Source: Macrostomum lignano
Lineage: Eukaryota
DNA length: 64,000 nucleotides
Direction of reading: 5' to 3'
Assembly: GCA_002269645.1 (NCBI GenBank)
Contig: NIVC01000866.1
Span: 200,441 to 264,440 of the forward strand
How positions within the stretch are numbered: the first letter of the stretch is position 1; each line of letters opens with the position of its first letter. Shown here piece by piece: positions 5,460 to 60,306 of this stretch. Under the pieces are notes generated by a model. It saw only the letters and a program-made list of their open reading frames with translations, was not told the origin of the DNA and searched no databases. A program made the position numbers and the translations under genes.

Positions 5460-5975
5460 ATTAACGGAAGTAGATGGCACGTAACGGGGTAGATGGTAGA
5501 TTGGAGGGTAGATGATTGATTTTAAGGGTAGATTGTAGATTCGAGGGTAGATAGCACATTGGAGGGTAGTTGGTAGATTTGAGGTTAGATGGTAGATTAG
5601 AGGGTAATTGGTAGATTTGAGGTTAGATGGTAGATTAGAGGGTAGATGGTAGAATACAGGGTAGATTTGAGGGTAGATGGTAGATTCGAAGGCAGACGGT
5701 AGATTGTATGGGTAGATAGTAGATTAGAGGATATATAGTAGATCGGATGGTAGTTGGTAGATTGTAGGGGTAGATAATAGATTACAGGGTAGAAGGTAGA
5801 TTCTAGATTAGTGGGTATATAGTAGATTGGAGAGTAGATAGATTGGAGAGTGGATAGTAGATTAGAGGGTAGATAGTCGATTAGAGGTTAGATAGTATAT
5901 TGGAGGGTAGACAGTAGATTGTAGGAGTAGATGGTAGATTAGAGGGTAGATGGTTTATTGTAAGGGTAGATAGCA
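5460..5975. repeat. Degenerate GGTAGAT-rich repeat in a Sin3 intron
   Basis: Recurring AGGGTAGATGGTAGATT. Confidence 0.85.
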
Positions 5976-14559: not shown

Positions 14560-17500
14560 TGCTAGCTATACTCGTAGATAGATGCTAGATAGATAGATGC
14601 TAGCTAGATAGATACTAGCTGGATAGATGCTAGCTAGATAGATGCTAAACAGATAGATGCTAGCCAGATAAATGCTAGCTAGACAGATGCTAAATAGATA
14701 GATGCAAGCTAGATAAATGCTAGCTAGACAGATGCTAAATAGATAGATACTAGCTAGATAGATGCTAAATAGATAGATGCTAGCCAGATAGATGCTAGCT
14801 AGACAGATGCTAAATAGATAGATGCAAGCTAGATAAATGCTAGCTAGATAGATGCTAGCTAGATAGATACTAGCTAGACAGATGCTAGCTAGACAGACGC
14901 TATAGCTAGACAGATGCTAGCTAGACAGATGCTAGCTAGACAGATGCTATAGCTAGACAGATGCTATAGCTAGACAGATGCTAGCTAGACAGATGCTAGC
15001 TAGATAGATGCTATAGCTAGACAGATGCTATAGCTAGACAGATGCTATAGCTAGATAAATGCTAGCTAGACAGATGCTATAGCTAGACAGATGCTAGCTA
15101 GACAGATGCTATAGCTAGACAGATGCTAGCTAGACAGATGCTATAGCTAGACAGATGCTAGCTAGACAGATGCTATAGCTAGACAGATGCTAGCTAGACA
15201 GATGCTATAGCTAGACAGATGCTAGCTAGACAGATGCTATAGCTAGACAGATGCTAGCTAGACAGATGCTATAGCTAGACAGATGCTAGCTAGACAGATG
15301 CTATAGCTAGACAGATGCTAGCTAGACAGATGCTAGCTAGACAGATGCTATAGCTAGATAGATGCTAGCTAGACAGATGCTAGCTAGACAGATGCTAGCT
15401 AGACAGATGCTATAGCTAGACAGATGCTAGCTAGACAGATGCTAGCTAGACAGATGCTAGCTAGACAGATGCTAGCTAGACAGATGCTATCGCTAGATAG
15501 ATGCTAGCTAGATAGATGCTAGCTAGACAGATGCTAGCTAGACAGATGCTATAGCTAGACAGATGCTAGCTAGACAGATGCTAGCTAGACAGATGCTAGC
15601 TAGACAGATGCTATAGCTAGACAGATGCTAGCTAGACAGATGCTAGCTAGACAGATGCTATAGCTAGACAGATGCTATAGCTAGACAGATGCTATAGCTA
15701 GACAGATGCTAGCTAGACAGATGCTAGCTAGACAGATGCTATAGCTAGACAGATGCTATAGCTAGACAGATGCTAGCTAGACAGATGCTAGCTAGACAGA
15801 TGCTAGCTAGACAGATGCTATAGCTAGACAGATGCTAGCTAGACAGATGCTATAGCTAGACAGATGCTAGCTAGACAGATGCTATAGCTAGACAGATGCT
15901 AGCTAGACAGATGCTATAGCTAGACAGATGCTAGCTAGACAGATGCTATAGCTAGACAGATGCTAGCTAGACAGATGCTATAGCTAGACAGATGCTATAG
16001 CTAGACAGATGCTAGCTAGACAGATGCTAGCTAGACAGATGCTATAGCTGGATAGATGCTAGCTAGACAGATGCTATAGCTAGACAGATGCTAGCTAGAC
16101 AGATGCTATAGCTAGACAGATGCTAGCTAGACAGATGCTAGCTAGACAGATGCTAGCTAGACAGATGCTAGCTAGACAGATGCTATAGCTAGACAGATGC
16201 TAGCTAGACAGATGCTAGCTAGACAGATGCTAGCTAGACAGATGCTATAGCTAGACAGATGCTAGCTAGACAGATGCTAGCTAGACAGATGCTAGCTAGA
16301 CAGATGCTATAGCTAGACAGATGCTAGCTAGACAGATGCTATAGCTAGATAAATGCTAGCTAGACAGATGCTATAGCTAGACAGATGCTAGCTAGACAGA
16401 TGCTATAGCTAGACAGATGCTAGCTAGACAGATGCTATAGCTAGACAGATGCTAGCTAGACAGATGCTATAGCTAGACAGATGCTAGCTAGACAGATGCT
16501 ATAGCTAGATAGATGCTAGCTAGACAGATGCTATAGCTAGACAGATGCTAGCTAGACAGATGCTATAGCTAGACAGATGCTAGCTAGACAGATGCTATAG
16601 CTAGACAGATGCTAGCTAGACAGATGCTATAGCTAGACAGATGCTAGCTAGACAGATGCTATAGCTAGATAGATGCTAGCTAGACAGATGCTATAGCTAG
16701 ATAGATGCTAGCTAGACAGATGCTATAGCTAGACAGATGCTAGATAGACAGATGCTATAGCTAGACAGATGCTAGCTAGACAGATGCTAGCTAGACAGAT
16801 GCTATAGCTAGACAGATGCTAGCTAGACAGATGCTAGCTAGACAGATGCTAGCTAGACAGATGCTAGCTAGACAGATGCTATAGCTAGATAGATGCTAGC
16901 TAGACAGATGCTAGCTAGACAGATGCTAGCTAGACAGATGCTATAGCTAGACAGATGCTAGCTAGACAGATGCTAGCTAGACAGATGCTATAGCTAGACA
17001 GATGCTAGCTAGACAGATGCTAGCTAGACAGATGCTATAGCTAGACAGATGCTAGCTAGACAGATGCTAGCTAGATAGATGCTAGCTAGATAAATGCTAT
17101 AGCTAGACAGATGCTAGCTAGACAGATGCTATAGCTAGACAGATGCTAGCTAGACAGATGCTAGCTAGACAGATGCTATAGCTAGACAGATGCAAGCTAG
17201 ACAGATGCTAGCTAGACAGATGCTATAGCTAGACAGATGCTAGCTAGACAGATGCTAGCTAGACAGATGCTATAGCTAGATAGATGCTAGCTAGACAGAT
17301 GCTAGCTAGACAGATGCTAGCTAGACAGATGCTATAGCTAGACAGATGCTAGCTAGACAGATGCTAGCTAGACAGATGCTAGCTAGACAGATGCTAGCTA
17401 GACAGATGCTATCGCTAGATAGATGCTAGCTAGATAGATGCTAGCTAGACAGATGCTAGCTAGACAGATGCTATAGCTAGACAGATGCTAGCTAGACAGA

Positions 17501-17655
17501 TGCTAGCTAGACAGATGCTAGCTAGACAGATGCTATAGCTAGATAGATGCTAGCTAGACAGATGCTATAGCTAGACAGATGCTATAGCTAGACAGATGCT
17601 AGCTAGACAGATGCTAGCTAGACAGATGCTAGCTAGATAGATGCTAGCTGGATAA
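14560..17655. repeat. ~3.1 kb satellite of mixed 15-bp (AGATGCTAGCTAGAC) and 17-bp (AGATGCTATAGCTAGAC) units
   Basis: Direct reading. Confidence 0.97.
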
Positions 17656-18104
17656 ATGCTCCTTTTTCTCGATTTTTACTGGCAGTTGGAAAGTAAAAAT
17701 GGAGTGCAGAGAATTGATTTAATTTTCCTTGCTCAATAAAATACCGAAGGCCCAGTGGACTTCCAATCCAGATAGCTGAATACCGGCAGTCCATGAAAAC
17801 TGCGCCAAAGCGGCTGACTGATTTATGCCCCGACAGCCGCCCAGGTACAAAAAGCTGCAACCACACGCGGTCTATTTGAATAATTGGCCCGCCGTTCCGC
17901 AGTGCTGCAGAGCCGTCTCCGCTTTGACAGGCCCGGATGCTAATAAAAAACCTCCCTGACCCCGATAGAGCGGCATAAATCAAAGGGAATTTGGATGGTA
18001 TTGAGGGGGCTACGGGGTTGGCGGCAACAACTGTGCTCGCATCTGCGATTACCTTTACCTGGGCTTGACGGCATGGAGCTGATATTGCAGTTCATTTGCA
18101 TAGT

Positions 18105-19076: not shown

Positions 19077-19172
19077 TCACCACCAGATCGGCTTGGTACC
19101 GGCTGCCGCAGCTGCTGCTCCTGCACCGAAGAAATACTCGAAGAAAGCCAGGCTGCTTGGAGGCTGCTGTTG

Positions 19173-19215
<43 letters not shown>

Positions 19216-20705
19216 AACGCCGCAGATCCCCGGCCACCTCTGCCGCTGCCGCCGCCTCCACCAGGGCACTTGCCTTTGCTCACGTGCAGCCTCACCTGGC
19301 CTTTATTGGCGAACGGCCTGCTGCAGAACTGGCAGCGAATCTTCTTTTTCGTCTGGGATTGCTGCTGCTGCTGCTGCTGCTGCGGCGTCGGCGGCGACGG
19401 AGACGCCTGGGCTGCTGCCGGCTCGTCGAACGCTGCCGCCGGATCTTCGCTAGCGATCGCCATCACGGATGCCGCCTCCGAGGTCGACGAAGTGGACGCC
19501 GCCGATGGCGATGCCGCAGCTGCCGCTGCTGTCGACGATGCCGGAGCTTCTGAGAAGCCGGCAGTTTTGTCGACAAGCCGCTGCAGGCAGTACAGCGGAT
19601 TGGAGTCACCGTTGCTGAGACCGGCCGGCGTTGTCGGGCCTGACGGAGCCAGGAGGTCCGGGCAGAGATAGGCCGGCTGTTTGGGGGAGTCCCCGGGCTG
19701 CGGCTTTGATAAAGAGGCTGGGGCTGGGGGCGGTGCGGCAGGGTTCAGCGCCGCTGCTGTTCCGGAGGCCGCGGCCGCTGGATCAGCGGCGCTGCTGATG
19801 ATCTCGGCGTAGTGCCGGCTGCGCACCATGTGCATGGTGAGCTCCGGCAGGGTGCGGAAGCTTTGCCGGCAGCGGATGCAGCGCAGGATCTCCCTGGTCT
19901 GCTCTGTCTCCGAGTTGATCCACATGTCCTGGCCGCGGACCAGCTTGGGCTGCTCGCGGGCCGGCGGACTCGTTGTCTTCGGCGGCCGCGGCGGCGGCTC
20001 GACAACAGCAGCGGAAGCCGCCAGGGCGTCCGTCGAGGCGGAGAAGTCGCCGTGCCCCGCGGCCCGCATGTGCACCGTCAGGCCGACAAGGTTGGCGAAG
20101 CGGCGGCCGCAGGAGCAGCGGAAGTCCGTCTCGCCGCTGCTCGGCCGGGCAGCCTCGGCTACAGGCGTCGGCAGCGGCGGCGGCGCAGGCGGCAGCAGAC
20201 GCGGCGGAGGCGGCGGCGGCATGATGGAGCTGAGGTAGGACGTCAGGCACTGGGCATACATCGCTGCAGCTGCTGCTGCTGCCTGCCATTGACTGTCAGC
20301 GGACGGGCCAGCAACTGAAGACGATGGGTTGAGCTGCAGCATCAACTGAGAATGCTGGTGAGCTGCCAGCAGCGGCGACAGGTCCGGCGTCAGGCTGGGC
20401 GTCGGCAAAGGCTTCGCTGTCAGGTCCAGCGGCGGCGAGGCAACAGCGAAGGATTCGCTGCACTCCGGTGACTCCGGCAGTCGAGGCCGCTTCTTGGGCG
20501 GCACGCAACTGCTGATCCTTGTTGCTGCCTGGTGGACGACGCCATCAGAGCCGGCTGGAGACTGCGGCTGCGGCACCGGCCTCTTCTGGCACTGCTGATT
20601 GGCATTGGCGATCATCCCGGCTGAGGTCTGGGGAAGTGGGGCGATGGAGTTATGCAAATACAACTGCTGCATGGCAGGCTGAATGTGCTGCTTTTGGTTG
20701 GGCAT
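19077..20705 (-). CDS. tsh: Teashirt/tiptop (TSHZ) family C2H2 zinc-finger protein, 542 aa, intronless ORF
   Basis: KLVRGQDMW...EQTREILRCIRCRQSFRTLPELTMHM...HYAEII is the teashirt signature; other fingers FRCSCGRRFANLVGLTVHMRAAGH and CQFCSRPFANKGQVRLHVSKGKC; PLDLT CtBP-type motif; NPLYCLQRLVDK block. Confidence 0.9.
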
Positions 20706-24045: not shown

Positions 24046-24569
24046 TTAAACTATTAAATTATTTTCTTCGTATCAGTTTCATATTGAACTGAAGTATATT
24101 TTAGCATATCTTTAACTGCAAACACCCTACGCTTGCACTTGCGAGCGGGCTCCGCAGTTTTATGACATGATTGCTCAAAATGCCTCCAGCCACTACTGTT
24201 TGCGGCGCTATGGCTCCTGTCCTTATCTATCAAAGGCGTGCCGCGCTGTTTTAAATTGATTACAGCTGTGCAGAGAAGTGTTTGCGTGCGCATAGAGGGT
24301 AAACAGGCGAAGTTCTCTGCAGTGTCTACTCTCGTAATTTCAAGTATGTTCTGTCAGGCTGCAGAGATTCACAAAATTCCTGTCTGTATAGAAATCTTAT
24401 CATATTGGTTGAGAGCCGAAGCCATGCTATAATTTACGATGCGCTTGACAATTTTGCGACTGGCTCAAAAGCACTTTGACCGGCAGGCAGGTTGTGAATG
24501 TACCGTACGCAAAAATAATTTATCTTTGGTCATTGGGACTGGGTGCTGAATCGAAACAGATGCAGAGAC

Positions 24570-27608
<3,039 letters not shown>

Positions 27609-27850
27609 GCACGCGAAGGCGTATTCAGCATGCCAGTGAAGTATGAGACAGACTAGGCCCATGGGCTAAGGTCTGCGATGCTTCACGCCTGCCCCTATCT
27701 TCAGCAGGTCAAGGCTGGTGGGAGGTCTGCACCCTCTATTTGCCTCTGGCAGCCGCAGACCCCCCCCCACGCTGTCTCGCAAGTCGACCCAGGGTACTCG
27801 TCCCCGCGTGTGTTCAAGGCAGTCCCTAGGGCTGCTGGACAGACTGGGCT
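27609..27850 (+). ncRNA. HDV-like (nested double pseudoknot) self-cleaving ribozyme at the 5' end of the retrotransposon
   Basis: P1 GCACGCG 27609-15 / CGCGUGU 27805-11 (G1.U wobble); P2 CCCA 27788-91 / UGGG 27845-48; P3 GGG 27792-94 / CCC 27802-04; L3 UACUCGU; P1.1 C27797-G27812 and A27796-U27813; P4 27814-39; J4/2 CAGAC with candidate catalytic C27840. Confidence 0.85.
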
Positions 27851-28126
27851 CCGGCGCTGGCGACCCTATCCAGTGGCTTCGGCCGAATTTGGGTATGCGG
27901 GTCTGGCTCGCCAACCTGCAGGCCGTGGTACTGCTCAACGTACTCTCTAATGCCTAAGGTGTTGACCGTGCCGATGGGCTGGAAGGCCGGGGAGTAGTCC
28001 GGTCGCAAGCGGTCCCCCTCCTGGTGTCGGGCCAGCCTTGAGGGTGCTATTGGCCTACTGCCCGGTCAGGTGGAGCGGCCGGGTGGGTACCGCGCCCCTT
28101 TGAGGGTAGCCCACCAACCTTTTATC

Positions 28127-29647
28127 ATGGCCTTCGAGCCGACTATGGATAAACAAGCTATTTCTAGGGACGGGGACCCTTCTAAACCCCAACCTCAGTC
28201 CGAAGGACCGGCCGGCCCTGCTGGCAGATCCCAACCGACTGATTCAACTGTGGCAAAGGAAGGACCGGCTGGCTCTGCTGGCAGATCCGACCAGAGCTAC
28301 CAAACTCAAAATACCCTAAGACCTGCCAGCTCCGCTGGTGGATCTAAGGGAACCGCGAGCTCTGAGCCTAAAGGACCGGCCAAATCTGGCAGATCCGATG
28401 AAGCTCAGCGGGCTCGGCTTGAGCGCAAACGCGCTAAATAACGCGCCAAATGGCAGGCCAAGAAGGGAGCTGCGGGGGCCAAAGCGGCGGCGTCCACCAT
28501 GGATGCTGAAGCGACTGGAGTCCCAAGGCAACCAGGCGGGCCGGCCGGTGGAAGCTCCAGTAGTTCAGCGGCGGCGCTCCCTGGAGCTGCTGCCGCGGCT
28601 GCTGAGGCCGAAACCACGGCGCAACAAATGGCCACTGCCAACAAGGAGGTTCCTTCGGGAGCTACCTTTGCGGCGAAGGCCAAGGCCAAAATCCCGGGAG
28701 TGATCATCCAAGGTCGCGACCAGGACTGGACCACTGATCAGCTTCAAAAAGTGTGGAGTGCTATTGACTCCTATCTGATTGAGCTGACTGTCGAGGAGGG
28801 AATCTCCATCGGCGTTGAGCGGATGGTGCTGCGAAGCACATTCGTTCTTATTGCTCCTAGCAGCGAGGAGGACGCTCGGCGGCTGCTCCAGCGGCTACCG
28901 ACGGTCTCCTTGGATGCTGACCTTGGTGGAGCTCTTTTTCTTCGCGAGGGCCAGCGTCCAAAGACGATACCCTATGTGGTTTTCGTCCCTGCTAAGAGCA
29001 CCGCAGCTGGACCAGACGTTATTCGCCGGGTCCTACTGCGTCTGAACCCCGACCTCCCTGCTAGTGGACTGGTGTATCACCGCAAAGTCCGCAGGGGGGA
29101 GACGGGCAACTCAATTGTCCTCGGCCTTTCCAGCACTTGGGCGAGTCGGTACCCTAATGGATCCTCTTTCCAGCTGGGTGCCCTCAAGCTCAAGTTGCGC
29201 CGAGGAAAGTCTGCCAAAGGGAAGGCTACTGCCAACCCCGGCATCTCCGGCAAGAGCGGGGCGCAGTCTAAGGCCCAAGGAAAGGCGCAAGCCGATCCCA
29301 AAGCCAAAGCTGCATCTCGCCCCTCTGCTAGCAGCAGTTCGGCGACCGCGGTAACGGCTCCGGCCGAGCCCCGGGAACCAAACCTGCCAGTCGGAGAAGG
29401 AGTTGAGGACGAGGCCGGGTCTTCGGAATCCGAGCTCTCCTCGGCCACCTTGGTGGGGTCTGAAGGTAAAGATGCAGGTGAGGAAGCTTCCTCCATCCTG
29501 TCATCGGAGCCTGAGGACTCTGCTGGGGGGCCGGTGGGGGTGAGGAGGCCATGGACGTCGACCAACTCCCATCTCCCAGTCAAGCCCCAGCGGCCTGGGA
29601 CGAGGACGATCTGTTGTCCAAGTCTCCTTGATGGCCCTGGGCTCTAG
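28127..29647 (+). CDS. Retrotransposon ORF1 (gag-like), interrupted by an in-frame TAA at 28439-28441
   Basis: Track ORFs 28070-28441 and 28499-29647 share a frame; KRAK*RAKWQ suggests AAA>TAA; globular core (KVWSAIDSYL...YVVFVP...LRLNPDLP) resembles LOA-type ORF1 (inference); no CCHC knuckle seen. Confidence 0.7.
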
Positions 29648-29670: not shown

Positions 29671-32600
29671 ATGACTAAGCTCCACGCTGCCAAAGGAGCG
29701 ACATTCTGTCTGCAAATAAATTTACAGCATTGCGTATCTGCGTCAGTAAATCTGATGAAGATTGCTGAGCTGTACAGGCCAGGCCTCATCCTGATCCAGG
29801 AACCCTGGATGCGCAACGGTAAGTTGCCCAACATTCCCTCTGGCTACTCTGATTTTTATGTGTGTGGCCCGGGGAACAGCCGCCCTAGAGCGGCTATCCT
29901 CGCTGCTAGCCATCTCCAGGCTTGGCTGAGGACTGATCTCTCTGATGGAGACCTTTGCGTCATCCAATCTAATCATTTCTCTCCGCGTACGTGTCTTGTT
30001 GCCTCGGTTTATATCCCAGGCGACAGAGACCCTGCTCCCGAGAGTTTACTGCGCCTTGCGCAGTACTGCGAGTCCCAGAACGCTGAGCTGTGCTTAGGGG
30101 GCGACCTCAACGCGCACCACAAGCACTGGGGCAGCAAAGATACCAACACTAGAGGAGAGGAGCTTCTGGCCCTCATCTCTAACACAAACCTCATGCTCTG
30201 CAACCGCGGCAGCACTCCTACCTTTAATAATGGCAGATGGACCGAGGTCCTCGACGCCACACTCGTTACCCCAAGACTCTTTGACAGAGTCAAGGAGTGG
30301 AGAGTCTGGTCTGAGGAGCCCTCCCTGTCTGACCACTGCTTTATCGCCTTTAATATCGCGGACACTAAAACCCAGTCTCCGATCACTTGGAGACGCAATA
30401 TCCGCAACACTGATTGGGCGGCCTACAAGGCTGCCCTTGATCTGCACCTGCAGGAACTCACGGACTTACGTCCGATTGAGACCTGCGAGGATGTGGATCA
30501 TATGGCTGAGACGCTGACAGGTTGCATTATTGCAGCCTACGAAGCGGCTTGTCCTGCTCGCGCCTACAGAGGCAAGACCTCGGCGCCGTGGTGGAACCCG
30601 GAGCTGGGGAAACTCAGGCGGAAGGCCAAAAGCCTTCATCGCCGTGCCATGAAGACCGGAAACCCGGAGGACATGGAGCTTTTCCGGCAAGCCTCCCGCA
30701 ATTTCAAATCTGAAGTGCGCAAGGCCAAGGAATGTAAGTGGCGCCAATTCTGCAATGAATTGGATCAAGACAGACCTACTTCTAGGCTTGTCAAGGCCCT
30801 TACAATGGACAAAATGTCCAAATTAGCCATGATAAAAAAGATGATGGCTCTCTTACTAAAGACCCTGAAGAAGTGCTTCAGCATATGCTTAGCACATTCT
30901 TCCCGAGGGTACCTACTGCTAGACCGGAGCCCAACCATTCGATGGATGGAGCCACCCTAGCGGCGGGCATTGTCACTGAAGACCTAATCGCTCGTGCGGT
31001 CAGAACCTTCAAACCCTTCAAATCTCCTGGACCTGATGGTATCTACCCTGTTCTCCTTCGTGAAGCAGCCAAGATACCCTCGTTCCTGAGACTCACCCGC
31101 AATCTTATGCGGGCCTCTATCCAGCTGGGATACGTTCCCAAAAGCTGGACTGAAGCTCGAGTAGTCTTTATTCCCAAACCTGGGAAGGGTGACTACCAAA
31201 GCGTCAAGGCCTTCCGGCCAATTAGCTTAACGTCAGCAATGCTTAAGCTCACTGAGAGGCTTATTCTCTGGCGGCTGCTCTCCTGCGAGCTGACAGCGAT
31301 GCCCCTCAGCAATAATCAGCACGCCTTCCGTACCGGGAGGTCGACTGACAGCGCCCTGCATGCGATTGTCGAAAAGATTGAACGGGCGGTACTGGGTGAC
31401 GGTTACGCCCTGGCTCTCTTTCTTGACATTGTTGGCGCCTTCGACAACGTTATCTTTGAAGCGCTTCAGAGGGCCCTTCAAAATCGCAAAGCTCATGCTA
31501 CCCTCATACGGTGGATCATGTACATGATCTCCAACCGTACGGTCACTGCCCAACTTCTTGGGCAAACTGCCTCCACCAGAGTCTGTAAGGGTGGACCCCA
31601 AGGCGGAGTCCTCACCCCGACGCTCTGGAACCTGGTCATGGACGCTCTTCTGAGTGACTCCCGACCTGACCCCGTCTTCAAAGTCGGGTATGCTGATGAC
31701 GTCACGGCCATTGTGGCAGGACCGTCTCCCAGCACGCTCAGGGATCTGATGCAGAGCTTTATCCGCAAAGCAGAATCCTGGGCCAATGACAATGGTTTGG
31801 AACTCTCTGAGCCCAAAACCGTTGCCATTATGTTTACCAGCAGACTACGCTGGAACATACGTCCTCTGCAGCTCTACGGCAGAGATATTGCCTTCGCGCA
31901 CCAGACCAGATGTCTCGGGGTCACACTTGACCACCGGCTCAACTGGTCCTTCCACGTGAAAGCAAAAGCTAAGCGTGCCTCAGCCATCCTGGCCCAGCTC
32001 CGACGAGCACTTGGCACTTCTTGGGGTCTATCCCCAAAGCGGCTTTGGTGGATCTATACTTCCGTAGTTAGACCTGCCATTACGTACGCCTCTGTTGTCT
32101 GGGTTAGCGCTACCCAGGTCAAAAGCCATGCAGACCTGCTCAACACGATCCAAGGCAGAGCGTGTAGGCTCATCTGCAACGCCACCAGGTCCACGCCCTT
32201 TGCTGGCATGGGGGCCTTTCTTAATCTTCCGCCTCTTGACCTCTTCATCAGGGGTGAGGCGGCTAGAACGACGCGGCGTCTAATTGATGCCGGCGTCAAA
32301 TTCATTTACATGAGAGCACCTGCTAAGCGGAACCTTGTCCCGCATAGCGATCTGTGCCTCAACTTTCTCAACGAGTGTCAGGCCAATCGCGTCTTCACCG
32401 ATGGCATTGCCTCAACGCTCAACCTGAGACAGCGCTACTCCGTAGCTATCGACTCGCGCGATAACATCAATGACCATTGGAACCCTGGTGAGCTTCATTG
32501 CTACACCGACGGTTCTAAGCAGTCAGCCAACACCGGCTTTGGTGTTGGAATCTTTCTGAACGGGAGGGTCATCGCTACCCACGCTCAATACACTGGGGTC

Positions 32601-33409
32601 AACTCCAGTGTTTTCCAAAATGAAGTTCTGGCCATCAGCTCCTGCACTGCAGAGCTTCTCGCCACTGGCGTTACTGGTAAGAACATCATTTTCCATTCGG
32701 ACAGCCAAGCTGCCTTGCACGCATCAGTGGCTGCAGCACCAACTCTGCTACAGTCCTTGACTGTATCAAACTCCTCAATGTGTTGGGTTCCGCCAACAAA
32801 ATTACCCTTAAGTGGGTTCCGGGGCATGTGGGGATCCGAGGAAATGAGTTGGCTGACACCCTTGCAAAAGTTGGTGCCTCCGGCTCCTCTCTCGGCCCCG
32901 AACCTCTTGTCCCGATCCCTGGCTGTGTCATCGACTCGCGCATCAAAGCGTGGATCAGGACTCAGCACCGCTCGACTTGGGCGAACCGCACGAACTGCAG
33001 GCAATCCAGAGGCGCTGTCCCTCAGCCCTCTCACCAGCTCCGGAAGCTCCTCTTGCGCCTCTCGCGCAGAGACATCCGGGCTGCCACCATGACCCTCTCT
33101 GGTCACGGCTGCTTCTCCAGGCACCAGTACCTGCAGGGCAACGCCACCAACGCCACCTGTAGTTTCTGCAACTCAGGTGACGAAACCGCTGAGCATTTCG
33201 TCAGCATCTGTCCCGCCTTCACGCGGGCCAGACTCACTTACCTCGGGCCACACACATCTATTACTAAAGCGTGCAAACCCGAAAACTTTAATCAGCTCAT
33301 GCGCTACCTTCGGGCCACCCGCAGGGCTGAACTCTCCTTTCCAGAGAGCACCATAGCTGCTGGCGACACTGGGGGACCTCCCTGGGCGGCGCCAACCCTC
33401 CGTCCATAG
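29671..33409 (+). CDS. Retrotransposon ORF2: AP endonuclease, reverse transcriptase, RNase H, C-terminal zinc knuckle; two apparent 1-nt deletions
   Basis: APE: IQEPW, GGDLNAHH, TPTF, LDATL, SDH. RT: SPGPDGI, FRPISLTS, QHAFR, FLDIVGAFD, QGGVLTPTLWN, GYADDV, CLGVTLD. RNase H: YTDGS, QNEV, SDSQAAL, WVPGHVGIRGNELAD. Knuckle CSFC...H...C. Frameshifts at ~30834-39 (A6 run) and ~32722. Confidence 0.93.
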
Positions 33410-34619
33410 CGACGCGTCGGCCGTTCAGGGACTAGCGGAATGGGCGCCCGCGCCTTCCCGCTGTGTCCCCTCCGGGACAGCCCTGCAGCTAAGTCAAGTA
33501 AGTCAAGACACTAAGGCAGACACTAAGACAGACACTAAGACAGACACTAGGACAGACACTAAGACAGACGCTAAGACAGACACTAAGACATAATTCTACC
33601 ACGGGAAGTGGGTTAGAAGGGCAGATCCATCATACTCGTACATGGGCGGGGACGGGTGGAGCCCTAGAAGGAGGCAAGGATCATCAGTAAACTGTTTGCA
33701 TTGGAGTGTTTCGAATTTTTCATCAAAGACTTTCCATCCGCAAGAACACTCACTCACCTCTTTCTGTCGAGTTGTGTTTTTTTAAATTAATCCGAAGTCA
33801 GAAAATCAAATATTCAATCTTTGAGTTAAAACTGCAAACTGGTTACAGCGCTTGAGCTGTAAAAAATTTTAATCTAAAGACTGAGTACCAAAGCGCTAAA
33901 ATAGTGAAATAGGAGGCAGTTAGTTATGGTCGGCATGGCGGTTTTAAAGACACACAGGGCCGGGTCCTTATTGGGTGTCCCCGGTCCACTGCATGGGCGG
34001 TAGAGATCAATCGCCAACCCCAGCCAAGGAGGCCGAGAACCGGAATCTGGAGACGCATCCGATCCAGCTACATTTTCAGACAAGAGGTGTTAGCCAAACT
34101 TCATGTTGATAAATAATAATGAGTTGCTGCTCCAAGTTCTGGTTGTGGGGCTCCATGGCTCTGCTCCCCATTACCCTTACTCCTTCCTCACTGACAGCCA
34201 CTTGTTCCCGCGTGTTTCGTCATGTCCCGTCTGTCTCTCCGCGGGTACCCGGGGTTGGCTTTATGACCAGTTCACCGCATGTATACTGCCATATATATTA
34301 CTTCTGGAAGGAGGTTATCAATTTGGAGGTTGGGGTGGGTGAGTGATTTATGATTTATGATGCCGCCTCCACCTCCCCCCCGTGTGCTGTCTGCGCGCCT
34401 CCGCGAATGCCGCTATTAAGATCGTAAAACCGTAAAGCCCCATGCTCTTAGCGCAGCTATTTTCAAGTTTGAGAACTTGAGAAGTCACTTCTCTCTCCGG
34501 GGGCCATTATTTTTAGTTTTTATGATAGATTGCAAGCCATAAATGTTCATAGGACTTACTCACACAGCATTAGCGTTAGCGCGCATGAAACAGCTGTTTA
34601 TGCAGAAGCAAGATGAACT

Positions 34620-35997: not shown

Positions 35998-38131
35998 ACA
36001 ACAACAACAATAACAACAACAAAATACGCGACCCGCATGCACAGTCGCAGATAGAGCAGGGCGCGTCAGATGGCGCGCCGCAGAGCCTGGGAGCGAACAA
36101 AGTCCGCTCCGTTGGCAGTGTCGGGCGCCCCAGCGTCGCACAGCAGGCAGTCCACGTATCGACGGGTTTGGGCCTGACCCCGCCTGAACAGACCCTGCAA
36201 GGTGAGCAGCAGGACGTCCTGAACAGGTTGGGGGCATTAGCCCTCGGCCCTGATCACGTGACCCGCCAGTTGAGGTCGCCGCCGGCGCAGGATGGTGGAC
36301 GGGCGCTGCAGCTTGGCCCGATCGTACAGGGCCTCGGTCCCGACGCTCTCGTCAGCTCGAAAGGCCGCACGGAGCAGCCCTGGAGTGCGCCGAGTCCAGC
36401 TGCCGCTCTAGCGTAGCCGTCAGCGTCCACGTCTCGGCGTTGTATAGCAGGACGGTTTTGACCAACGCCTGCCACAGCCGAGCCCTCTGGCGGTCGGGCA
36501 GCGCTTCGGACTGGAGGACGGCTCGGATCGAACGAAAGGCCGCCCAAGCAAGTCCTCTGCGCCGCCGGAGGTCCTCTTCCACGTGGGGCACCAGACCGCC
36601 GAGGTAGGTGAACCGCTGGCAGCGTGTGAGCGTGGTCGTCTGCCCGTCTGCGAAGCGACATGTCAGGTCCGCTGGGATGTTGGCCGGCACAGTCAGCACC
36701 TCGGTCTTCAGCGTGTTGACGATCAGAACGACGCTCGATGCCACCTCGACCAGCCTGTTGATCTGGCGCTGGGCGCCTTCAACGGACGAGGACAGGAGGG
36801 CGAGGTCGTCAGCGTAGCCAAGTACGCTTAGACGTTTTTCGCCGTGGCGGTGACCGATGCGTCTGCGCAGCAGGAAGCCGTCATTAGCCGAGGGGAGTGC
36901 GGTCCGAAGCACCCAGTCGGCGCTAGCGTGTCGCCCTGCAGAACTCCTGATGAAGTATCGAACAGGTCAGACAGGCCGTCCGCCGTCACCACATGAGCTC
37001 GAGTATCGCAATATAGCGCCATGACAGCGTCTCGATACCAGGTGGCTCGAAGGACAAAGGGAAGCGCGGCTCTCAACACCGAGTCAAACGCCTTTCGAAA
37101 GTCAACGAAGACAATGATCAGCGTAGACTGGCGGATGCGCGCCTCCTCGATGCCACGGCGGAGTGGGATCTGTGTCACTGTACCGCGTTGCGGCCGGAAT
37201 CCGTTCTGCTCGTACCGCAGGTACGGGTCCAGCACCGACTGCAGACGATTGAGCAGCAGCCGGTTGAAGAGCTTCGCGGTGCAGGACATCAGCAAGATCC
37301 CGCGGTGGTCTTCCTTCCGCGTTGTCCCTGCCTTCTTCGGGATCGGCACGATGTGCGCGACGGTCCACTCGGTAGGCGCAGGAGCGCCGGCGAGCACGCG
37401 GTTCATGACGCCTGTGACCTGGGAGGCCACACAGCGGAGCCGCAGCGCTTCGACCGGGACTTCGCCGGGGCCGAGCGCCTTGCCGCCTGATGTTTTCCGA
37501 GCGTACAGCACAACGTCCTCCGTGGTGACTGGCCTGGTGCAGAAGTCCTCCTCAGCTGGGAGCGGCGTGTCCAGTGGGAGCGCAAAGCTGGCGGGCAGCG
37601 GCGACGCGGGCGCGTTCACGATGCCGGCGAAGAAGTCGCGCAATTCATTCCTGCGCTCCTCGGGGGTGTCGCCGGCCAGGTTCAGCGCCACGCGCTTTTT
37701 GCGCCCCGTCAGAGTCCGGACGGCCGTCCACACTGCGCGGCTCTTCACGTCGGGGCCGGCTGCAGTGATGGACCTAATGGCGTCGTCGACAGCGGCCTGC
37801 TGCCGCTCGTCAAGAAGGCGCTCAAATGCGTCTTCAGCGTCGCCTGTGGGCCTCCGGTTTCCGCGGAGTCGCTCGATGTTGAGCCGCGCCTGCCTGATGA
37901 TGGGGTCGCTCTGCCAGACAGGCAGCGATTTCTGCGCTGGCCGCATCAGCGGGACCGTCTGCTCTGTAGCGGCTCTAACGGCGGTGCTGATGTCGGAATA
38001 CTCCGCCTCGCGCTGGTCTCCAAGCGCGCCGACGAAGGCACCCGCGAATTGACGCTTCACGCGGGTGTCCAACAGTGCGCGATAGTAGCGCCGTGGCCGC
38101 TGCTTTGGCGGTCGGTGGACACACTCGGTAG
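35998..38131 (-). mobile_element. 5'-truncated, degenerate RTE-like non-LTR retrotransposon (RT and C-terminal region)
   Basis: RT motifs KALGP, RGILLMSCTAKLFNRLL, EQNGFR, VDFRKAFDSV, GVLQGDTLAP, GYADDLALL, FTYLGG, LLYNAETWTLT; (TTG)n tail at 35998-36020; TSD ATCACTTTG at 35989-97 and 38132-40; deletion after GDTLAP and further frameshifts. Confidence 0.88.
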
Positions 38132-53492: not shown

Positions 53493-53974
53493 GTGAGTGA
53501 ATATTTTTGCTATCTATTCCTTTTTGTTTCGATAAATAACCATAGAATATTTTGCATACTACTGGTGGGAATTTCTAAGTAGTGTTTTGCAATGATGACT
53601 CAATTTAGTAAGCGTGGATAGCAATGGGCCATGCGAGTAAATAAAATGCACTCTCCTACACCCCTGGATACTGGATTAAGCTGAATATTATGTTTATTCA
53701 AGGCCTGCGTTGACTGATTAATTAAGTAGCAATTGCATTGTTCCATGCCTTTGTATGCATAACTGCAGTGTGATTGCGCTACCTATCAATTTTGCCTTCG
53801 ATTCCTCGTTACCATGGTATCACTCGCAAATCAAGTAGATTGCATTAGAACTGCGTGCTGACTATTAGCGGGTTCTGCTATAGATTATATCTGTACACCT
53901 ATAGTGGCTGGAAAATTTGCCTTTGACTGATGAATGCACCGTTTTTATTATTCTGCGTAGAAAGATGAGAGACA

Positions 53975-56390
53975 GGGATGCTAGAGAAGATGGGAGACAG
54001 AGATGCTAGGGGAGATGGGAGACAGATGCTAGGGGAGATGGGAGACAGAGATGCTAGGGGAGATGGGAGACAGATGCTAGGGGAGATGGGAGACAGAGAT
54101 GCTAGGGGAGATGGGAGACAGATGCTAGGGGAGATGGGAGACAGAGATGCTAGGGGAGATGGGAGACAGAGATGCTAGGGGAGATGGGAGACAGAGATGC
54201 TAGGGGAGATGGGAGACAGAGATGCTAGGGGAGATGGGAGATAAAGATGCTAGGGGAGATGGGAGACAGAGATGCTAGGGGAGATGGGAGACAGAGATGC
54301 TAGGGGAGATGGGAGACAGAGATGCTAGGGGAGATGGGAGACAGATGCTAGGGGAGATGGGAGACAGAGATGCTAGGGGAGATGGGAGACAGATGCTAGG
54401 GGAGATGGGAGACAGAGATGCTAGGGGAGATGGGAGACAGATGCTAGGGGAGATGGGAGACAGAGATGCTAGGGGAGATGGGAGACAGATGCTAGGGGAG
54501 ATGGGAGACAGAGATGCTAGGGGAGATGGGAGACAGAGATGCTAGGGGAGATGGGAGACAGAGATGCTAGGGGAGATGGGAGACAGAGATGCTAGGGGAG
54601 ATGGGAGATAAAGATGCTAGGGGAGATGGGAGACAGAGATGCTAGGGGAGATGGGAGATAAAGATGCTAGGGGAGATGGGAGACAGAGATGCTAGGGGAG
54701 ATGGGAGATAAAGATGCTAGGGGAGATGGGAGATAAAGATGCTAGGGAGATGGGAGATAAAGATGCTAGGGGAGATGGGAGACAGAGATGCTAGGGGAGA
54801 TGGGAGATAAAGATGCTAGGGGAGATGGGAGACAGAGATGCTAGGGGAGATGGGAGATAAAGATGCTAGGGGAGATGGGAGACAGAGATGCTAGGGGAGA
54901 TGGGAGACAGATGCTAGGGGAGATGGGAGACAGAGATGCTAGGGGAGATGGGAGACAGAGATGCTAGGGGAGATGGGAGATAAAGATGCTAGGGGAGATG
55001 GGAGACAGAGATGCTAGGGGAGATGGGAGACAGAGATGCTAGGGGAGATGGGAGACAGAGATGCTAGGGGAGATGGGAGACAGAGATGCTAGGGGAGATG
55101 GGAGATAAAGATGCTAGGGGAGACAGAGATGCTAGGGGAGATGGGAGATAAAGATGCTAGAGGAGACAGAGATGCTAGGGGAGATGGGAGATAAAGATGC
55201 TAGGGGAGATGGGAGATAAAAATGCTAGGGGAGATGGGAGATAAAGATGCTAGGGAGATGGGAGATAAAGATGCTAGGGGAGACAGAGATGCTAGGGGAG
55301 ATGGGAGATAAAGATGCTAGGGGAGATGGGAGACAGAGATGCTAGGGGAGATGGGAGACAGAGATGCTAGGGGAGATTGGAGATAAAAATTCTAGGGGAG
55401 ACAGAGATGCTAGGGGAGATGGGAGATAAAAATGCTAGGGGAGACAGAGATGCTAGGGGAGATGGGAGACAGATGCTAGGGGAGATGGGAGACAGAGATG
55501 CTAGGGGAGATGGGAGACAGATGCTAGGGGAGATGGGAGACAGAGATGCTAGGGGAGATGGGAGACAGAGATGCTAGGGGAGATGGGAGACAGAGATGCT
55601 AGGGGAGATGGGAGACAGAGATGCTAGGGGAGATGGGAGATAAAGATGCTAGGGGAGATGGGAGATAAAGATGCTAGGGGAGACAGAGATGCTAGGGGAG
55701 ATGGGAGATAAAAATGCTAGGGGAGACAGAGATGCTAGGGGAGATGGGAGATAAAGATGCTAGGGGAGATGGGAGATAAAGATGCTAGGGGAGATGGGAG
55801 ACAGAGATGCTAGGGGAGATGGGAGATAAAGATGCTAGGAGAGACAGAGATGCTAGGAGAGACAGAGATGCTAGGGGAGACAGAGATGCTAGGGGAGACA
55901 GAGATGCTAGGGGAGATGGGAGACAGAGATGCTAGGGGAGACAGAGATGCTAGGGGAGACAGAGATGCTAGGGGAGACAGAGATGCTAGGAGAGACAGAG
56001 ATGCTAGGGGAGACAGAGATGCTAGGGGAGACAGAGATGCTAGGGGAGACAGAGATGCTAGGAGAGACAAAGATGCTAGGGGAGACAGAGATGCTAGGGG
56101 AGACAGAGATGCTAGGGGAGACAGAGATGCTAGGGGAGACAGAGATGCTAGGGGAGACAGAGATGCTAGGAGAGACAGAGATGCTAGGAGAGACAGAGAT
56201 GCTAGGAGAGACAGAGATGCTAGGAGAGACAGAGATGCTAGGGGAGACAGAGATGCTAGGAGAGACAGAGATGCTAGGAGAGACAGAGATGCTAGGGGAG
56301 ACAGAGATGCTAGGAGAGACAGAGATGCTAGGAGAGACAGAGATGCTAGGGGAGACAGAGATGCTAGGGGAGACAGAGATGCTAGGGGAA
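53975..56390. repeat. 23/25-bp then 18-bp purine-rich satellite (GGGAGACAGAGATGCTAGGGGAGAT)n in GPx intron 2
   Basis: Direct reading. Confidence 0.96.
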
Positions 56391-56882: not shown

Positions 56883-57014
56883 GTGAGCTGCTGGGATGTG
56901 GGACAATAGTGGGCTGGTGAACTCTCGAAGTATAAGTCACTCTAACGGTCTAAGGGCTCTATATATTCTATACTTCGAGTATAATCAATTCTGCAAATCC
57001 CACTCTGTTAATTC

Positions 57015-59620: not shown

Positions 59621-60306
59621 TCTCCTTTTTTATTCCCTCTCTGAGCCTGCAGTTTTTACTTCAGTACTAATCCTCAAATGTAGCAGATTCCCAGCAACAA
59701 CAAAGCAGTGACTCCTCACCATGTATTATTGTAACCATAGTAACAATCTGATCCCTAAATACTGAATAGAGGTGGCAAATTTTGTAGACATAAACCTTTA
59801 CCTAACTAATTATCAATTTGTGTCAACACTCAATCCGTGCAAACAGCTGTTCGGGTTGGCATGGCAACGCTAATTGACTCCAGGGAGTCGCGGCTAATTA
59901 ATTTAATTACACAAATGCAGTAGCTGCACTATCGATTCATAGAGTCAACCCTAAAGACACTGTGTGACAATGAGAATTTCAAGTCAATGCCACTGTACAT
60001 CCTGTGTGAGTGCTTGCCGGCGTACCTATGCGTGTTGTGTGCTCAGGGTCAGCAAAACTGGACATATCGCCTTTAACCTGCATGTATAATGGGACAGAGG
60101 AGTTCTATAAATAGATTTATAGCTTTATAGAAGTATTCGATTATAAATGAGAGCATCCAAGTTGTAGTATTGACCATTGACAACACAATTACTATCAAGC
60201 CAGTGGATATTTTGTTATTTCCCTAGCTAGCATCTGGACTGGAGACGAAAATTGTACAATCACATTATCACATCTTGTTTTAAACGTTTCATTCACTATT
60301 TTGTAG

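What the first reader, a model, noticed from the sequence alone, without database searches (positions are those of the whole stretch)
27609..27850. Complete HDV-like self-cleaving ribozyme whose cleavage site coincides with the 5' junction of a LOA-like retrotransposon
Seen in sequence: every element of the HDV fold can be assigned. P1 is 7 bp, G27609-G27615 with C27805-U27811, including the hallmark G1.U wobble. P3 is GGG/CCC closing a 7-nt L3 UACUCGU (canonical U-N-C-U-C-G-Y). P1.1 has 2 bp, with a compensatory A-U pair where HDV has C-G (A27796-U27813, C27797-G27812). P4 is UC-AA-GGCAGUCC-CUA-GGGCUGCU-G-GA. J4/2 is C-A-G-A-C, fitting the CNRA consensus. P2 is CCCA/UGGG, extendable across bulges. 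The ~170-nt J1/2 is itself fully hairpinned (AGGCGU/ACGCCU, AGCAU/AUGCU, GGUCUGC/GCAGACC). The predicted scissile bond lies 5' of G27609, exactly at the TSD/element boundary that was defined independently. Established knowledge: HDV-like ribozymes process the 5' ends of R2, R4, RTE, SART, Baggins (LOA) and L1Tc/ingi elements. Inference: this element needs no promoter of its own and is cut out of read-through satellite transcripts. I do not know of such a ribozyme described for a LOA-like element in a flatworm, but I cannot search to confirm that.
Basis: partly seen in the sequence, partly recalled or inferred. Interest (0 to 1): 0.88.

Follow-up and report, generated by a model that had tools for sequence, protein, structure and literature searches.

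The report
HDV-like ribozyme heading a flatworm LINE
The first 240 bases of a dead LOA-like retrotransposon copy in the flatworm Macrostomum lignano fold into a hepatitis-delta-type self-cutting RNA whose cut site is the element's 5' end; this is a well-supported new example of a device already known from R2, Baggins, RTE and L1Tc elements.

Summary
Pairing alone is weak evidence, because a descriptor with a long J1/2 hits hundreds of places in the window. Anchored at element base 1 it matched 0 of 5000 dinucleotide shuffles. The decisive evidence is one diverged relative, Logan contig L001 (ORF2 58% identical). It starts exactly at the base aligned to G27609 and keeps the whole fold: 80 pairs, 99.4% paired, 24 compensatory changes against 1-2 in slid controls. 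The pseudoknot helices P2 and P1.1 were not in the search model and still covary. The host is M. lignano (98% protein matches). The element has APE, RT and RNase H domains and is Lian/LOA-like. This copy is dead: one stop in ORF1 and two ORF2 frameshifts. Rfam finds nothing. Catalysis, the lack of a promoter and satellite read-through are untested. Verdict: new member of a known kind, moderate interest.

The parts
24566..27608 (.). Upstream flank: a 12-mer satellite (AGACACTAAGAC)n. Its last 11-14 nt (27596/98-27608/09) are the upstream copy of the target-site duplication.
   Evidence: TRF. Flank comparison.
27609..27615 (+). P1 5' strand (GCACGCG). The predicted scissile bond lies 5' of G27609, the first base of the element.
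   Evidence: L001 starts at the aligned base. Two compensatory pairs plus G.U to G-C.
27616..27787 (+). J1/2 peripheral domain, 172 nt. Closing helices: 27619-21/27778-80 and 27626-29/27771-74, with inner stem 27632-34/27713-15. Conserved long hairpin: 27636-27686. Second hairpin: 27687-92/27704-09. Third hairpin: 27716-30/27755-69, with tip 27740-44/27748-52.
   Evidence: Independent minimum-energy folds of the window and L001 give the same architecture. 14 compensatory pairs. The 27641-27681 block is 88% identical to L001 33-73.
27788..27791 (+). P2 5' strand (CCCA).
   Evidence: Pairs with 27845-48. One compensatory C-G to U-A change in L001. This helix was not part of the search model.
27792..27804 (+). 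P3 (GGG/CCC) closing L3 (UACUCGU). A27796 and C27797 are the 5' partners of P1.1.
   Evidence: P3 is invariant, and the L3 C-G dinucleotide is kept in L001 (UCUCCGU).
27805..27811 (+). P1 3' strand (CGCGUGU).
27812..27813 (+). J1/4 nucleotides G and U, which form P1.1 with C27797 and A27796.
   Evidence: Both pairs change on both sides in L001 (C180-G196, U181-A195). This helix was not in the search model.
27814..27839 (+). P4 hairpin. The 'NCAA' at its 5' foot is conserved in L001.
   Evidence: five compensatory pairs.
27840..27844 (+). J4/2 (CAGAC). C27840, in the first position, is the candidate catalytic cytosine.
   Evidence: Sequence. The position rule comes from PMC10879173. The L001 counterpart is ambiguous; C228 is the likeliest.
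27845..27848 (+). P2 3' strand (UGGG). This is the 3' end of the 240-nt ribozyme.
27849..28126 (+). Remainder of the 5' UTR, with short blocks conserved in L001.
28127..29647 (+). ORF1, about 506 codons, interrupted by an in-frame stop at 28439-28441.
   Evidence: 98% identical to M. lignano proteins.
29671..33409 (+). ORF2 with APE endonuclease, reverse transcriptase and RNase H. It is split over three frames, with frameshifts near 30819-30900 and 32708-32792.
   Evidence: Pfam. tblastn against the intact relative P0002.
33410..33507 (+). 3' UTR ending in TAAGTCAAG x2. The blocks TAGCGGAATGGGCG and CCCTGCAGCTAAGTC are shared with L001.
33508..33590 (.). Downstream flank: the same satellite resumes. 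Its first unit, ACACTAAGGCAG, is the downstream copy of the target-site duplication.

Best explanation
Window 27609-27848 encodes a 240-nt HDV-like (delta-type) self-cleaving ribozyme. It forms the extreme 5' end of a 5.9-kb LOA/Lian-like non-LTR retrotransposon of Macrostomum lignano, inserted in a 12-mer satellite.

Proposed mechanism:
1. Any transcript entering from upstream folds into the nested double pseudoknot (P1, P2, P3, P1.1, P4).
2. The large J1/2 insert folds on its own into a closed multi-branch domain. This holds the distal ends of P1 and P2 together.
3. C27840, at the start of J4/2, acts as the general acid/base.
4. The RNA cuts itself 5' of G27609.
5. The released element RNA starts precisely at its first base with a 5'-OH, which explains why copies have that exact 5' end.

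Shown here: the fold, its conservation with compensatory changes in a relative that shares 58% ORF2 identity, and the coincidence of the cleavage site with the 5' end in both elements.

Inferred: catalysis itself, the identity of the catalytic C, dependence on upstream transcription, and any IRES or protein-binding role.

This particular copy is coding-dead, although its ribozyme pairing is intact.
For: - All helices are present at the stated coordinates.
- An anchored descriptor match at nt 1 occurred in 0 of 5000 shuffles for each of the two elements.
- A covariance model built from the window sequence alone finds L001 1-239 over the full model, starting at nt 1, at 68.8 bits and E about 1e-19.
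- In 525 kb of 83 other related loci the next best score is 12.6 bits at E 0.07.
- On the window + L001 alignment, 80 pairs are 99.4% paired. 24 pairs change on both sides, against 1-2 when partners are slid by 1-3 columns and 0 of 500 shuffles reaching that value.
- P2 (1 compensatory pair) and P1.1 (2 of 2 compensatory) were not in the model, so they are an unbiased test.
- The J1/2 domains of the two elements, folded independently, give the same architecture.
- The element is a real retrotransposon: APE, RT and RNase H domains, a target duplication and a satellite flank.
- Literature precedents: P1 of 6-7 bp, and a P1-P1' separation of 23 to over 700 nt in R2 ribozymes (PMC3774820). J1/2 helices activate large HDV-like ribozymes (PMC4908430). 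Baggins and RTE elements carry such ribozymes (PMC6765202).
Against: - No Rfam HDV-family model matches, at gathering score or at E<=10. The models probably cannot span a 172-nt J1/2 insert.
- There is only one comparator sequence, and no other genomic copies could be retrieved.
- P2 is only 4 bp in the window, whereas R2 ribozymes usually have at least 5.
- P1.1 contains an A-U pair.
- In L001, P1 is 6 bp and the cleavage-site pair is G-C, not G.U.
- In the model alignment the L001 column under C27840 is U229. A catalytic C is kept there only if C228 is left unpaired.
- The copy is degenerate.
- Self-cleavage was not measured.
Confidence: 0.82

Rival explanations
1. Ribozyme relic. The fold descends from a working HDV-like ribozyme, but this copy, or this whole lineage, no longer cleaves efficiently. 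The structure persists by recent descent or for another role.
For: - The copy is coding-dead: a stop in ORF1 and two ORF2 frameshifts.
- P2 is only 4 bp and P1.1 has an A-U pair.
- L001 lacks the G.U wobble, and its catalytic C assignment is ambiguous.
Against: - Every pair of the core is intact in the window.
- L001 has intact ORF1 and ORF2 and still keeps the fold through compensatory changes, which implies selection on pairing.
Confidence: 0.1
2. The precise 5' end is set by an internal RNA polymerase II promoter that starts at G27609. The conserved 5' structure serves transcription, translation (IRES-like) or binding of the element's proteins, and the HDV-like pairing is secondary or redundant.
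For: - The most conserved stretch is not the catalytic core. It is a hairpin inside J1/2, 27641-27681, 88% identical to L001.
- L1Tc combines a promoter and a ribozyme in the same 77 nt (PMC3383444).
- The R2 protein binds its ribozyme region, and IRES-like roles have been proposed (PMC6765202).
Against: - This does not explain covariation in the pseudoknot helices P1, P2 and P1.1, which join bases about 200 nt apart in exactly the HDV order.
- It does not explain the anchored-shuffle result.
- It is also not exclusive of the ribozyme reading.
Confidence: 0.06
3. Chance match. A GC-rich 5' UTR happens to satisfy a permissive pseudoknot descriptor.
For: - The bare descriptor with a long J1/2 hits hundreds of sites in the window.
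- About 11 anchors per strand remain even with an L3 constraint.
- There is no Rfam hit.
Against: - 0 of 5000 shuffles matched when anchored at nt 1, in two elements.
- 24 compensatory pairs against 1-2 in slid controls.
Confidence: 0.02

Closest known systems
HDV-like ribozymes of Baggins (LOA clade) and RTE retrotransposons (Ruminski et al. 2011, as summarised in PMC6765202)
   Same: A delta-type double pseudoknot sits at the extreme 5' end of an APE-type, non-site-specific LINE. Cleavage defines the element's 5' end. These elements are thought to be expressed by read-through.
   Different: - The host is a flatworm (Macrostomum), not an insect.
- There is no detectable sequence similarity, and Rfam models do not match.
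- J1/2 is a 172-nt conserved multi-branch domain.
- I could not read the primary paper, so a feature-by-feature comparison with Baggins was not done.
R2 ribozymes, especially those of silkmoths (PMC3774820)
   Same: - Same fold.
- P1 of 6-7 bp.
- Very long J1/2 loops (216-498 nt in silkmoths; P1-P1' separation of up to more than 700 nt).
- P3/L3/P1.1 is the most conserved core.
- A planarian R2 ribozyme has been predicted, so the fold is known in flatworms.
   Different: - R2 is site-specific for 28S rDNA, uses a restriction-like endonuclease and is co-transcribed by Pol I. Many R2 elements cleave upstream, in the 28S sequence.
- Here the element is APE-type, sits in a satellite, and cleaves at or within 1 nt of the junction.
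- Silkmoth J1/2 shows little conservation, whereas here it is structurally conserved.
drz-Agam-2-type large HDV-like ribozymes with a P1.2 peripheral helix (PMC4908430)
   Same: A helix in J1/2 closes the gap between the outer ends of P1 and P2 (the 'pinch'). Here the closing helices 27619-21/27778-80 and 27626-29/27771-74 are flanked by linkers of conserved length: 3 nt on the 5' side and 7 nt on the 3' side in both elements.
   Different: Here the domain is a branched structure of about 170 nt with three hairpins, not a single helix. Its effect on rate is untested.
L1Tc Pr77/L1TcRz of Trypanosoma cruzi (PMC3185411, PMC3383444)
   Same: An HDV-like ribozyme lies at nt 1 of a dispersed APE-type LINE. 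It may combine with other 5' functions, and its P1.1 is non-canonical.
   Different: L1Tc packs everything into 77 nt, with a 1-bp P1.1 and a demonstrated promoter. Here the ribozyme spans 240 nt and no promoter is known.
Twister-variant ribozyme of Perere-3 (RTE) in Schistosoma mansoni (PMC8501958)
   Same: A flatworm LINE with a 5' self-cleaving ribozyme next to the target-site duplication.
   Different: It is a different ribozyme class (twister, not HDV-like), and part of its P1 comes from the target duplication.

Membership tests
HDV-like (delta) self-cleaving ribozymes | Nested double pseudoknot in the order P1 - J1/2 - P2 - P3 - L3 - P3' - P1' - P1.1 - P4 - J4/2 - P2'. | tested here: met
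   Coordinates verified. The same order is conserved in L001, with 24 compensatory pairs overall.
HDV-like (delta) self-cleaving ribozymes | P1 of 6-7 bp beginning at the cleavage site. The first base is G, usually in a G.U wobble. | tested here: met
   Window: 7 bp with G27609.U27811. L001: 6 bp with G1-C194, so the wobble is not kept. The 6-7 bp range is from PMC3774820..
HDV-like (delta) self-cleaving ribozymes | A 3-bp P3 closing a roughly 7-nt L3 with conserved C and G residues. | tested here: met
   The window has GGG-UACUCGU-CCC and L001 has GGG-UCUCCGU-CCC. The importance of the L3 C and G is from PMC3774820. The exact published consensus could not be checked here.
HDV-like (delta) self-cleaving ribozymes | P1.1: one or two pairs between L3 and the nucleotides just 3' of P1. 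| tested here: met
   The window has A27796-U27813 and C27797-G27812. L001 has C180-G196 and U181-A195. Both pairs are compensatory, and the helix was not in the search model.
HDV-like (delta) self-cleaving ribozymes | Catalytic cytosine at the first position of J4/2. | tested here: inconclusive
   In the window, C27840 is first in J4/2 after the U27814-A27839 pair. In L001 the aligned column is U229, and C228 qualifies only if the G197-C228 pair is open. The rule is from PMC10879173.
HDV-like (delta) self-cleaving ribozymes | Match to a curated covariance model (Rfam HDV, drz and related families). | tested here: not met
   No hit at gathering score or at E<=10, for the window or for L001. 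The 172-nt J1/2 insert is the likely reason. This is a detection criterion, not a structural definition.
HDV-like (delta) self-cleaving ribozymes | Divalent-ion-dependent self-scission that yields a 2',3'-cyclic phosphate and a 5'-OH, and is abolished by C to U at the catalytic site. | not testable with these tools
   Needs in vitro transcription and cleavage assays.
Ribozyme-terminated non-LTR retrotransposons (R2, R4, RTE, Baggins, L1Tc type) | The ribozyme cleavage site coincides with, or lies just upstream of, the element's 5' junction. | tested here: met
   The satellite/element junction is at 27608/09 or 27609/10. L001 starts at the aligned G.
Ribozyme-terminated non-LTR retrotransposons (R2, R4, RTE, Baggins, L1Tc type) | Expression by co-transcription from an upstream host promoter, with no internal promoter. 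| not testable with these tools
There are no transcript data and no eukaryotic promoter test.
LOA clade of non-LTR retrotransposons | ORF1 plus an ORF2 with APE endonuclease, RT and a C-terminal RNase H. | tested here: met
   Pfam: Exo_endo_phos_2, RVT_1 and RNase_H.
LOA clade of non-LTR retrotransposons | Phylogenetic placement of the RT within LOA (with LOA, Lian, Baggins, Bilbo). | tested here: inconclusive
   The only clade-informative name among 120 listed hits is 'Lian-aa1 retrotransposon protein', at 36% identity. No reference set was available for a tree.

The most novel reading that the evidence does not exclude
The 172-nt J1/2 insert may be more than a spacer. It is a conserved, closed multi-branch domain. 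Its 41-nt hairpin core (27641-27681) is more conserved than the catalytic centre, and its linkers to P1 and P2 are fixed at 3 nt and 7 nt. It could be a second functional module built into the ribozyme: a binding site for the element's ORF1 or ORF2 protein, an IRES-like entry site for the uncapped cleaved RNA, or a regulator that gates cleavage. That would make this a composite 5' module specific to a Macrostomum LINE lineage.
Probability: 0.3. Interest if true: 0.55.

Novelty: new member of a known kind. Interest (0 to 1): 0.36.

Why it matters
It adds a free-living flatworm and a LOA-like LINE lineage to the list of retrotransposons that use a delta-type ribozyme to make their own 5' end. 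No Rfam model catches it. It therefore shows that standard annotation misses large-J1/2 variants. Macrostomum lignano has transgenesis (PMC5730564), so 5' processing, translation of an uncapped LINE RNA and the role of the conserved J1/2 domain could be tested in vivo. The two sequences also give a seed for a covariance model to census this family in flatworm genomes.

Tried and rejected
1. Rfam scans of the window at gathering score, of the region at E<=10, and of L001 gave no HDV-family hit, only chance matches to unrelated families.
2. A pure pairing descriptor proved too permissive to mean anything on its own. I replaced it with an anchored shuffle test.
3. A search for other copies of the element in the window found none.
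4. Exact-protein look-ups of the window's ORF1 and APE ORF, and of an M. lignano UniRef protein, found nothing on record.
5. ORF1 homologue searches returned only UniRef entries without DNA.
6. The contig for P0001 has no DNA available.
7. Among 80 metagenome loci of LOA-like elements and three further contigs, there was no sequence match, no descriptor match except L001 and one doubtful site in L023, and no covariance-model match. The metagenome loci are about 28-36% identical in ORF2 to the relative used as query; the three further contigs encode proteins 38-45% identical to the window's RT region.
8. A pattern scan for the conserved J1/2 hairpin found nothing in viral contigs and three chance hits in bacterial genomes. 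A protein scan of viral contigs found nothing.
9. MAFFT alone misaligns the core. I therefore used an alignment made by the covariance model and tested the pseudoknot helices left out of that model.
11. The primary Baggins paper (PMC3308841) is not held.

Full report
**What is at the coordinates**

The 12-mer satellite (AGACACTAAGAC)n runs from 24566 to 27609 and resumes at 33506. Between the two stretches lies a 5.9-kb insert made of:
- a 5' UTR;
- ORF1, 28127-29647, with one in-frame stop at 28439-41;
- ORF2, which carries Exo_endo_phos_2, RVT_1 and RNase_H domains. It is split over three frames, with shifts near 30819-30900 and 32708-32792;
- a short 3' UTR ending in TAAGTCAAG x2.

Both flanks carry the minority satellite unit ACACTAAGGCAG, which makes up 15 of 135 units. 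This suggests a target duplication of 11-14 nt, with a chance probability of about 0.11. G27609 fits both the satellite phase and the element, so the junction is fixed to within 1 nt.

ORF1 is 98% identical to Macrostomum lignano UniRef proteins, and the RT region is 79-96% identical over parts of its length. The only clade-informative name among the hits is Lian-aa1, at 36% identity. 'A LOA-like LINE of a flatworm' is therefore right on host and architecture, but the clade is only provisional. This copy is coding-dead.

**Checking the fold**

- P1: 27609-15 with 27805-11, 7 bp, with a G.U pair at the cleavage site.
- P2: 27788-91 with 27845-48, only 4 bp.
- P3: GGG/CCC, closing L3 UACUCGU.
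- P1.1: A27796-U27813 and C27797-G27812.
- P4: 27814-39.
- J4/2: CAGAC, with C27840 first.

Rfam finds no HDV-type family, at gathering score or at E<=10.

**Is it more than chance?**

On pairing alone it is not. My own descriptor, allowing a long J1/2, hits 567 times on one strand of the window. About 11 anchors per strand remain with a mild L3 constraint. The claim, however, is anchored at element base 1. In 5000 dinucleotide shuffles of the first 400 nt, no match started at nt 1, and only 2 started within nt 1-3. The same test on the relative gave 0 and 1.

**Comparative evidence**

The RT search found an intact relative, P0002 (ORF2 58% identical), on Logan contig L001.
- The contig begins exactly at the base that aligns with G27609.
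- A covariance model built from the window sequence alone contained P1, the J1/2 domain, P3 and P4, but not the pseudoknot helices P2 and P1.1. It finds L001 1-239 across the whole model at 68.8 bits, E about 1e-19.
- In 83 other LOA-like loci totalling 525 kb, the next best score is 12.6 bits at E 0.07.

On the resulting two-sequence alignment I scored the full structure, pseudoknots included:
- 80 pairs, 99.4% paired.
- 24 pairs changed on both sides, against 1-2 when partners are slid by 1-3 columns.
- 0 of 500 shuffles reached the observed values.

By helix:

| Helix | Result |
|---|---|
| P1 | 2 compensatory pairs, plus G.U to G-C |
| P2 | 1 compensatory pair |
| P1.1 | 2 of 2 compensatory |
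| P4 | 5 compensatory pairs |
| P3 | invariant |

P2 and P1.1 were not in the model, so the alignment cannot have been fitted to them.

Differences in L001:
- P1 is 6 bp, which is within the 6-7 bp range reported for R2 ribozymes (PMC3774820).
- There is no G.U wobble at the cleavage site.
- P2 can extend to 6 bp.
- The column under C27840 is U229. A catalytic C at the first J4/2 position (the rule stated in PMC10879173) is kept only if C228 is unpaired. I regard this as unresolved.

**The J1/2 insert**

Folded independently, the 172-nt window J1/2 and the 163-nt L001 J1/2 give the same closed architecture:
- two closing helices;
- a long hairpin, 27636-27686, whose core is 88% identical between the two elements;
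- a second hairpin that differs in sequence but sits in the same place;
- a third hairpin, GGUCUGC/GCAGACC.

The linkers to P1 and P2 are 3 nt and 7 nt in both elements.

A closing helix in J1/2 is known to speed up large HDV-like ribozymes by bringing P1 and P2 together (PMC4908430). J1/2 loops of 216-498 nt occur in silkmoth R2 ribozymes (PMC3774820).

**Mechanism**

The best-supported reading is a delta-type ribozyme that cuts 5' of G27609 and so produces the element's exact 5' end from any longer transcript.
- Shown: the fold, its conservation, and the coincidence of the cleavage site with the 5' end in two elements.
- Inferred: catalysis, the catalytic residue, the lack of an internal promoter, and transcription through the satellite.
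- Rivals: a relic that no longer cleaves; a promoter, IRES or protein-binding structure that only incidentally looks like HDV; and chance. All three are less likely. The second is not exclusive of the ribozyme reading.

**Comparison with what is known, and novelty**

- HDV-like ribozymes at LINE 5' ends are established for R2, R4/Dong, Baggins, RTE and L1Tc (PMC3774820, PMC6765202, PMC3185411).
- A planarian R2 ribozyme has been predicted (PMC3774820).
- Schistosoma Perere-3 uses a twister variant instead (PMC8501958).
- I found no paper linking Macrostomum to a ribozyme of this kind.

This is a new member of a known kind. The identification is sound and is missed by Rfam, but it would not surprise a specialist. 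The conserved J1/2 domain is the one feature that could hold something new.

**Limits**

There is only one comparator. No further copies of the family could be retrieved. No experiment was possible.

Noticed in passing
window 28439-28441; about 30819-30900; about 32708-32792: The element copy is coding-dead. ORF1 has an in-frame stop, and ORF2 has two frameshifts relative to the intact relative P0002. The ribozyme pairing is nevertheless fully intact.
   Followed up: yes
L001 1 and L001 5955-6492: The Logan contig starts exactly at the predicted cleavage-site G, yet runs about 540 nt past the element's 3' end into unique sequence that carries an antisense ORF. This asymmetry would fit an RNA-derived contig that is 5'-processed and reads through at the 3' end. 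I could not find out what type of run it is.
   Followed up: no
window 27641-27681 (L001 33-73): A 41-nt hairpin core inside J1/2 is 88% identical between elements whose 5' UTRs are otherwise barely alignable. It is more conserved than the catalytic core, and its function is unknown.
   Followed up: partly
window 27890-27894 with 27787-27791: An alternative 5-bp P2 (ACCCA/UGGGU) would place a different C (27883/27884) at the start of J4/2.
   Followed up: yes
window 33433-33507; L001 about 5890-5950: The 3' UTR blocks TAGCGGAATGGGCG and CCCTGCAGCTAAGTC are shared with L001. The window copy ends in a tandem TAAGTCAAG x2 instead of poly(A). This is possibly the RT recognition and slippage site.
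   Followed up: partly
window 28050-28090 (L001 515-555), and blocks such as CCGGGGAGTA-TCCGG near 27980-28000: Short conserved blocks lie in the 5' UTR downstream of the ribozyme, just before the ORF1 start. They could be translation-related structure.
   Followed up: no
window 36828-38072 (- strand): A second, unrelated reverse-transcriptase fragment (RVT_1, E 5e-13) lies in a 65% GC stretch. It is another retroelement remnant.
   Followed up: no
window 19077-20705 (- strand): A 542-aa ORF with weak C2H2 zinc-finger matches. It may be a host gene or a transposon-derived protein.
   Followed up: no
whole window: The tandem-repeat load is extraordinary: 87 TRF rows and at least a dozen distinct minisatellite arrays of 0.3-3 kb, for example 14575-17660 (15-mer), 53963-55844 (25-mer) and 56990-59624 (28-mer).
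   Followed up: no
L023 157-433: This is the only other descriptor match with a GC-only P3 among the 84 related loci: P1 GGGCGCG/CGCGCCC and L3 GCCACGU, about 1.7 kb upstream of ORF2. It could be a ribozyme of a different LOA-like lineage or a chance hit.
   Followed up: no
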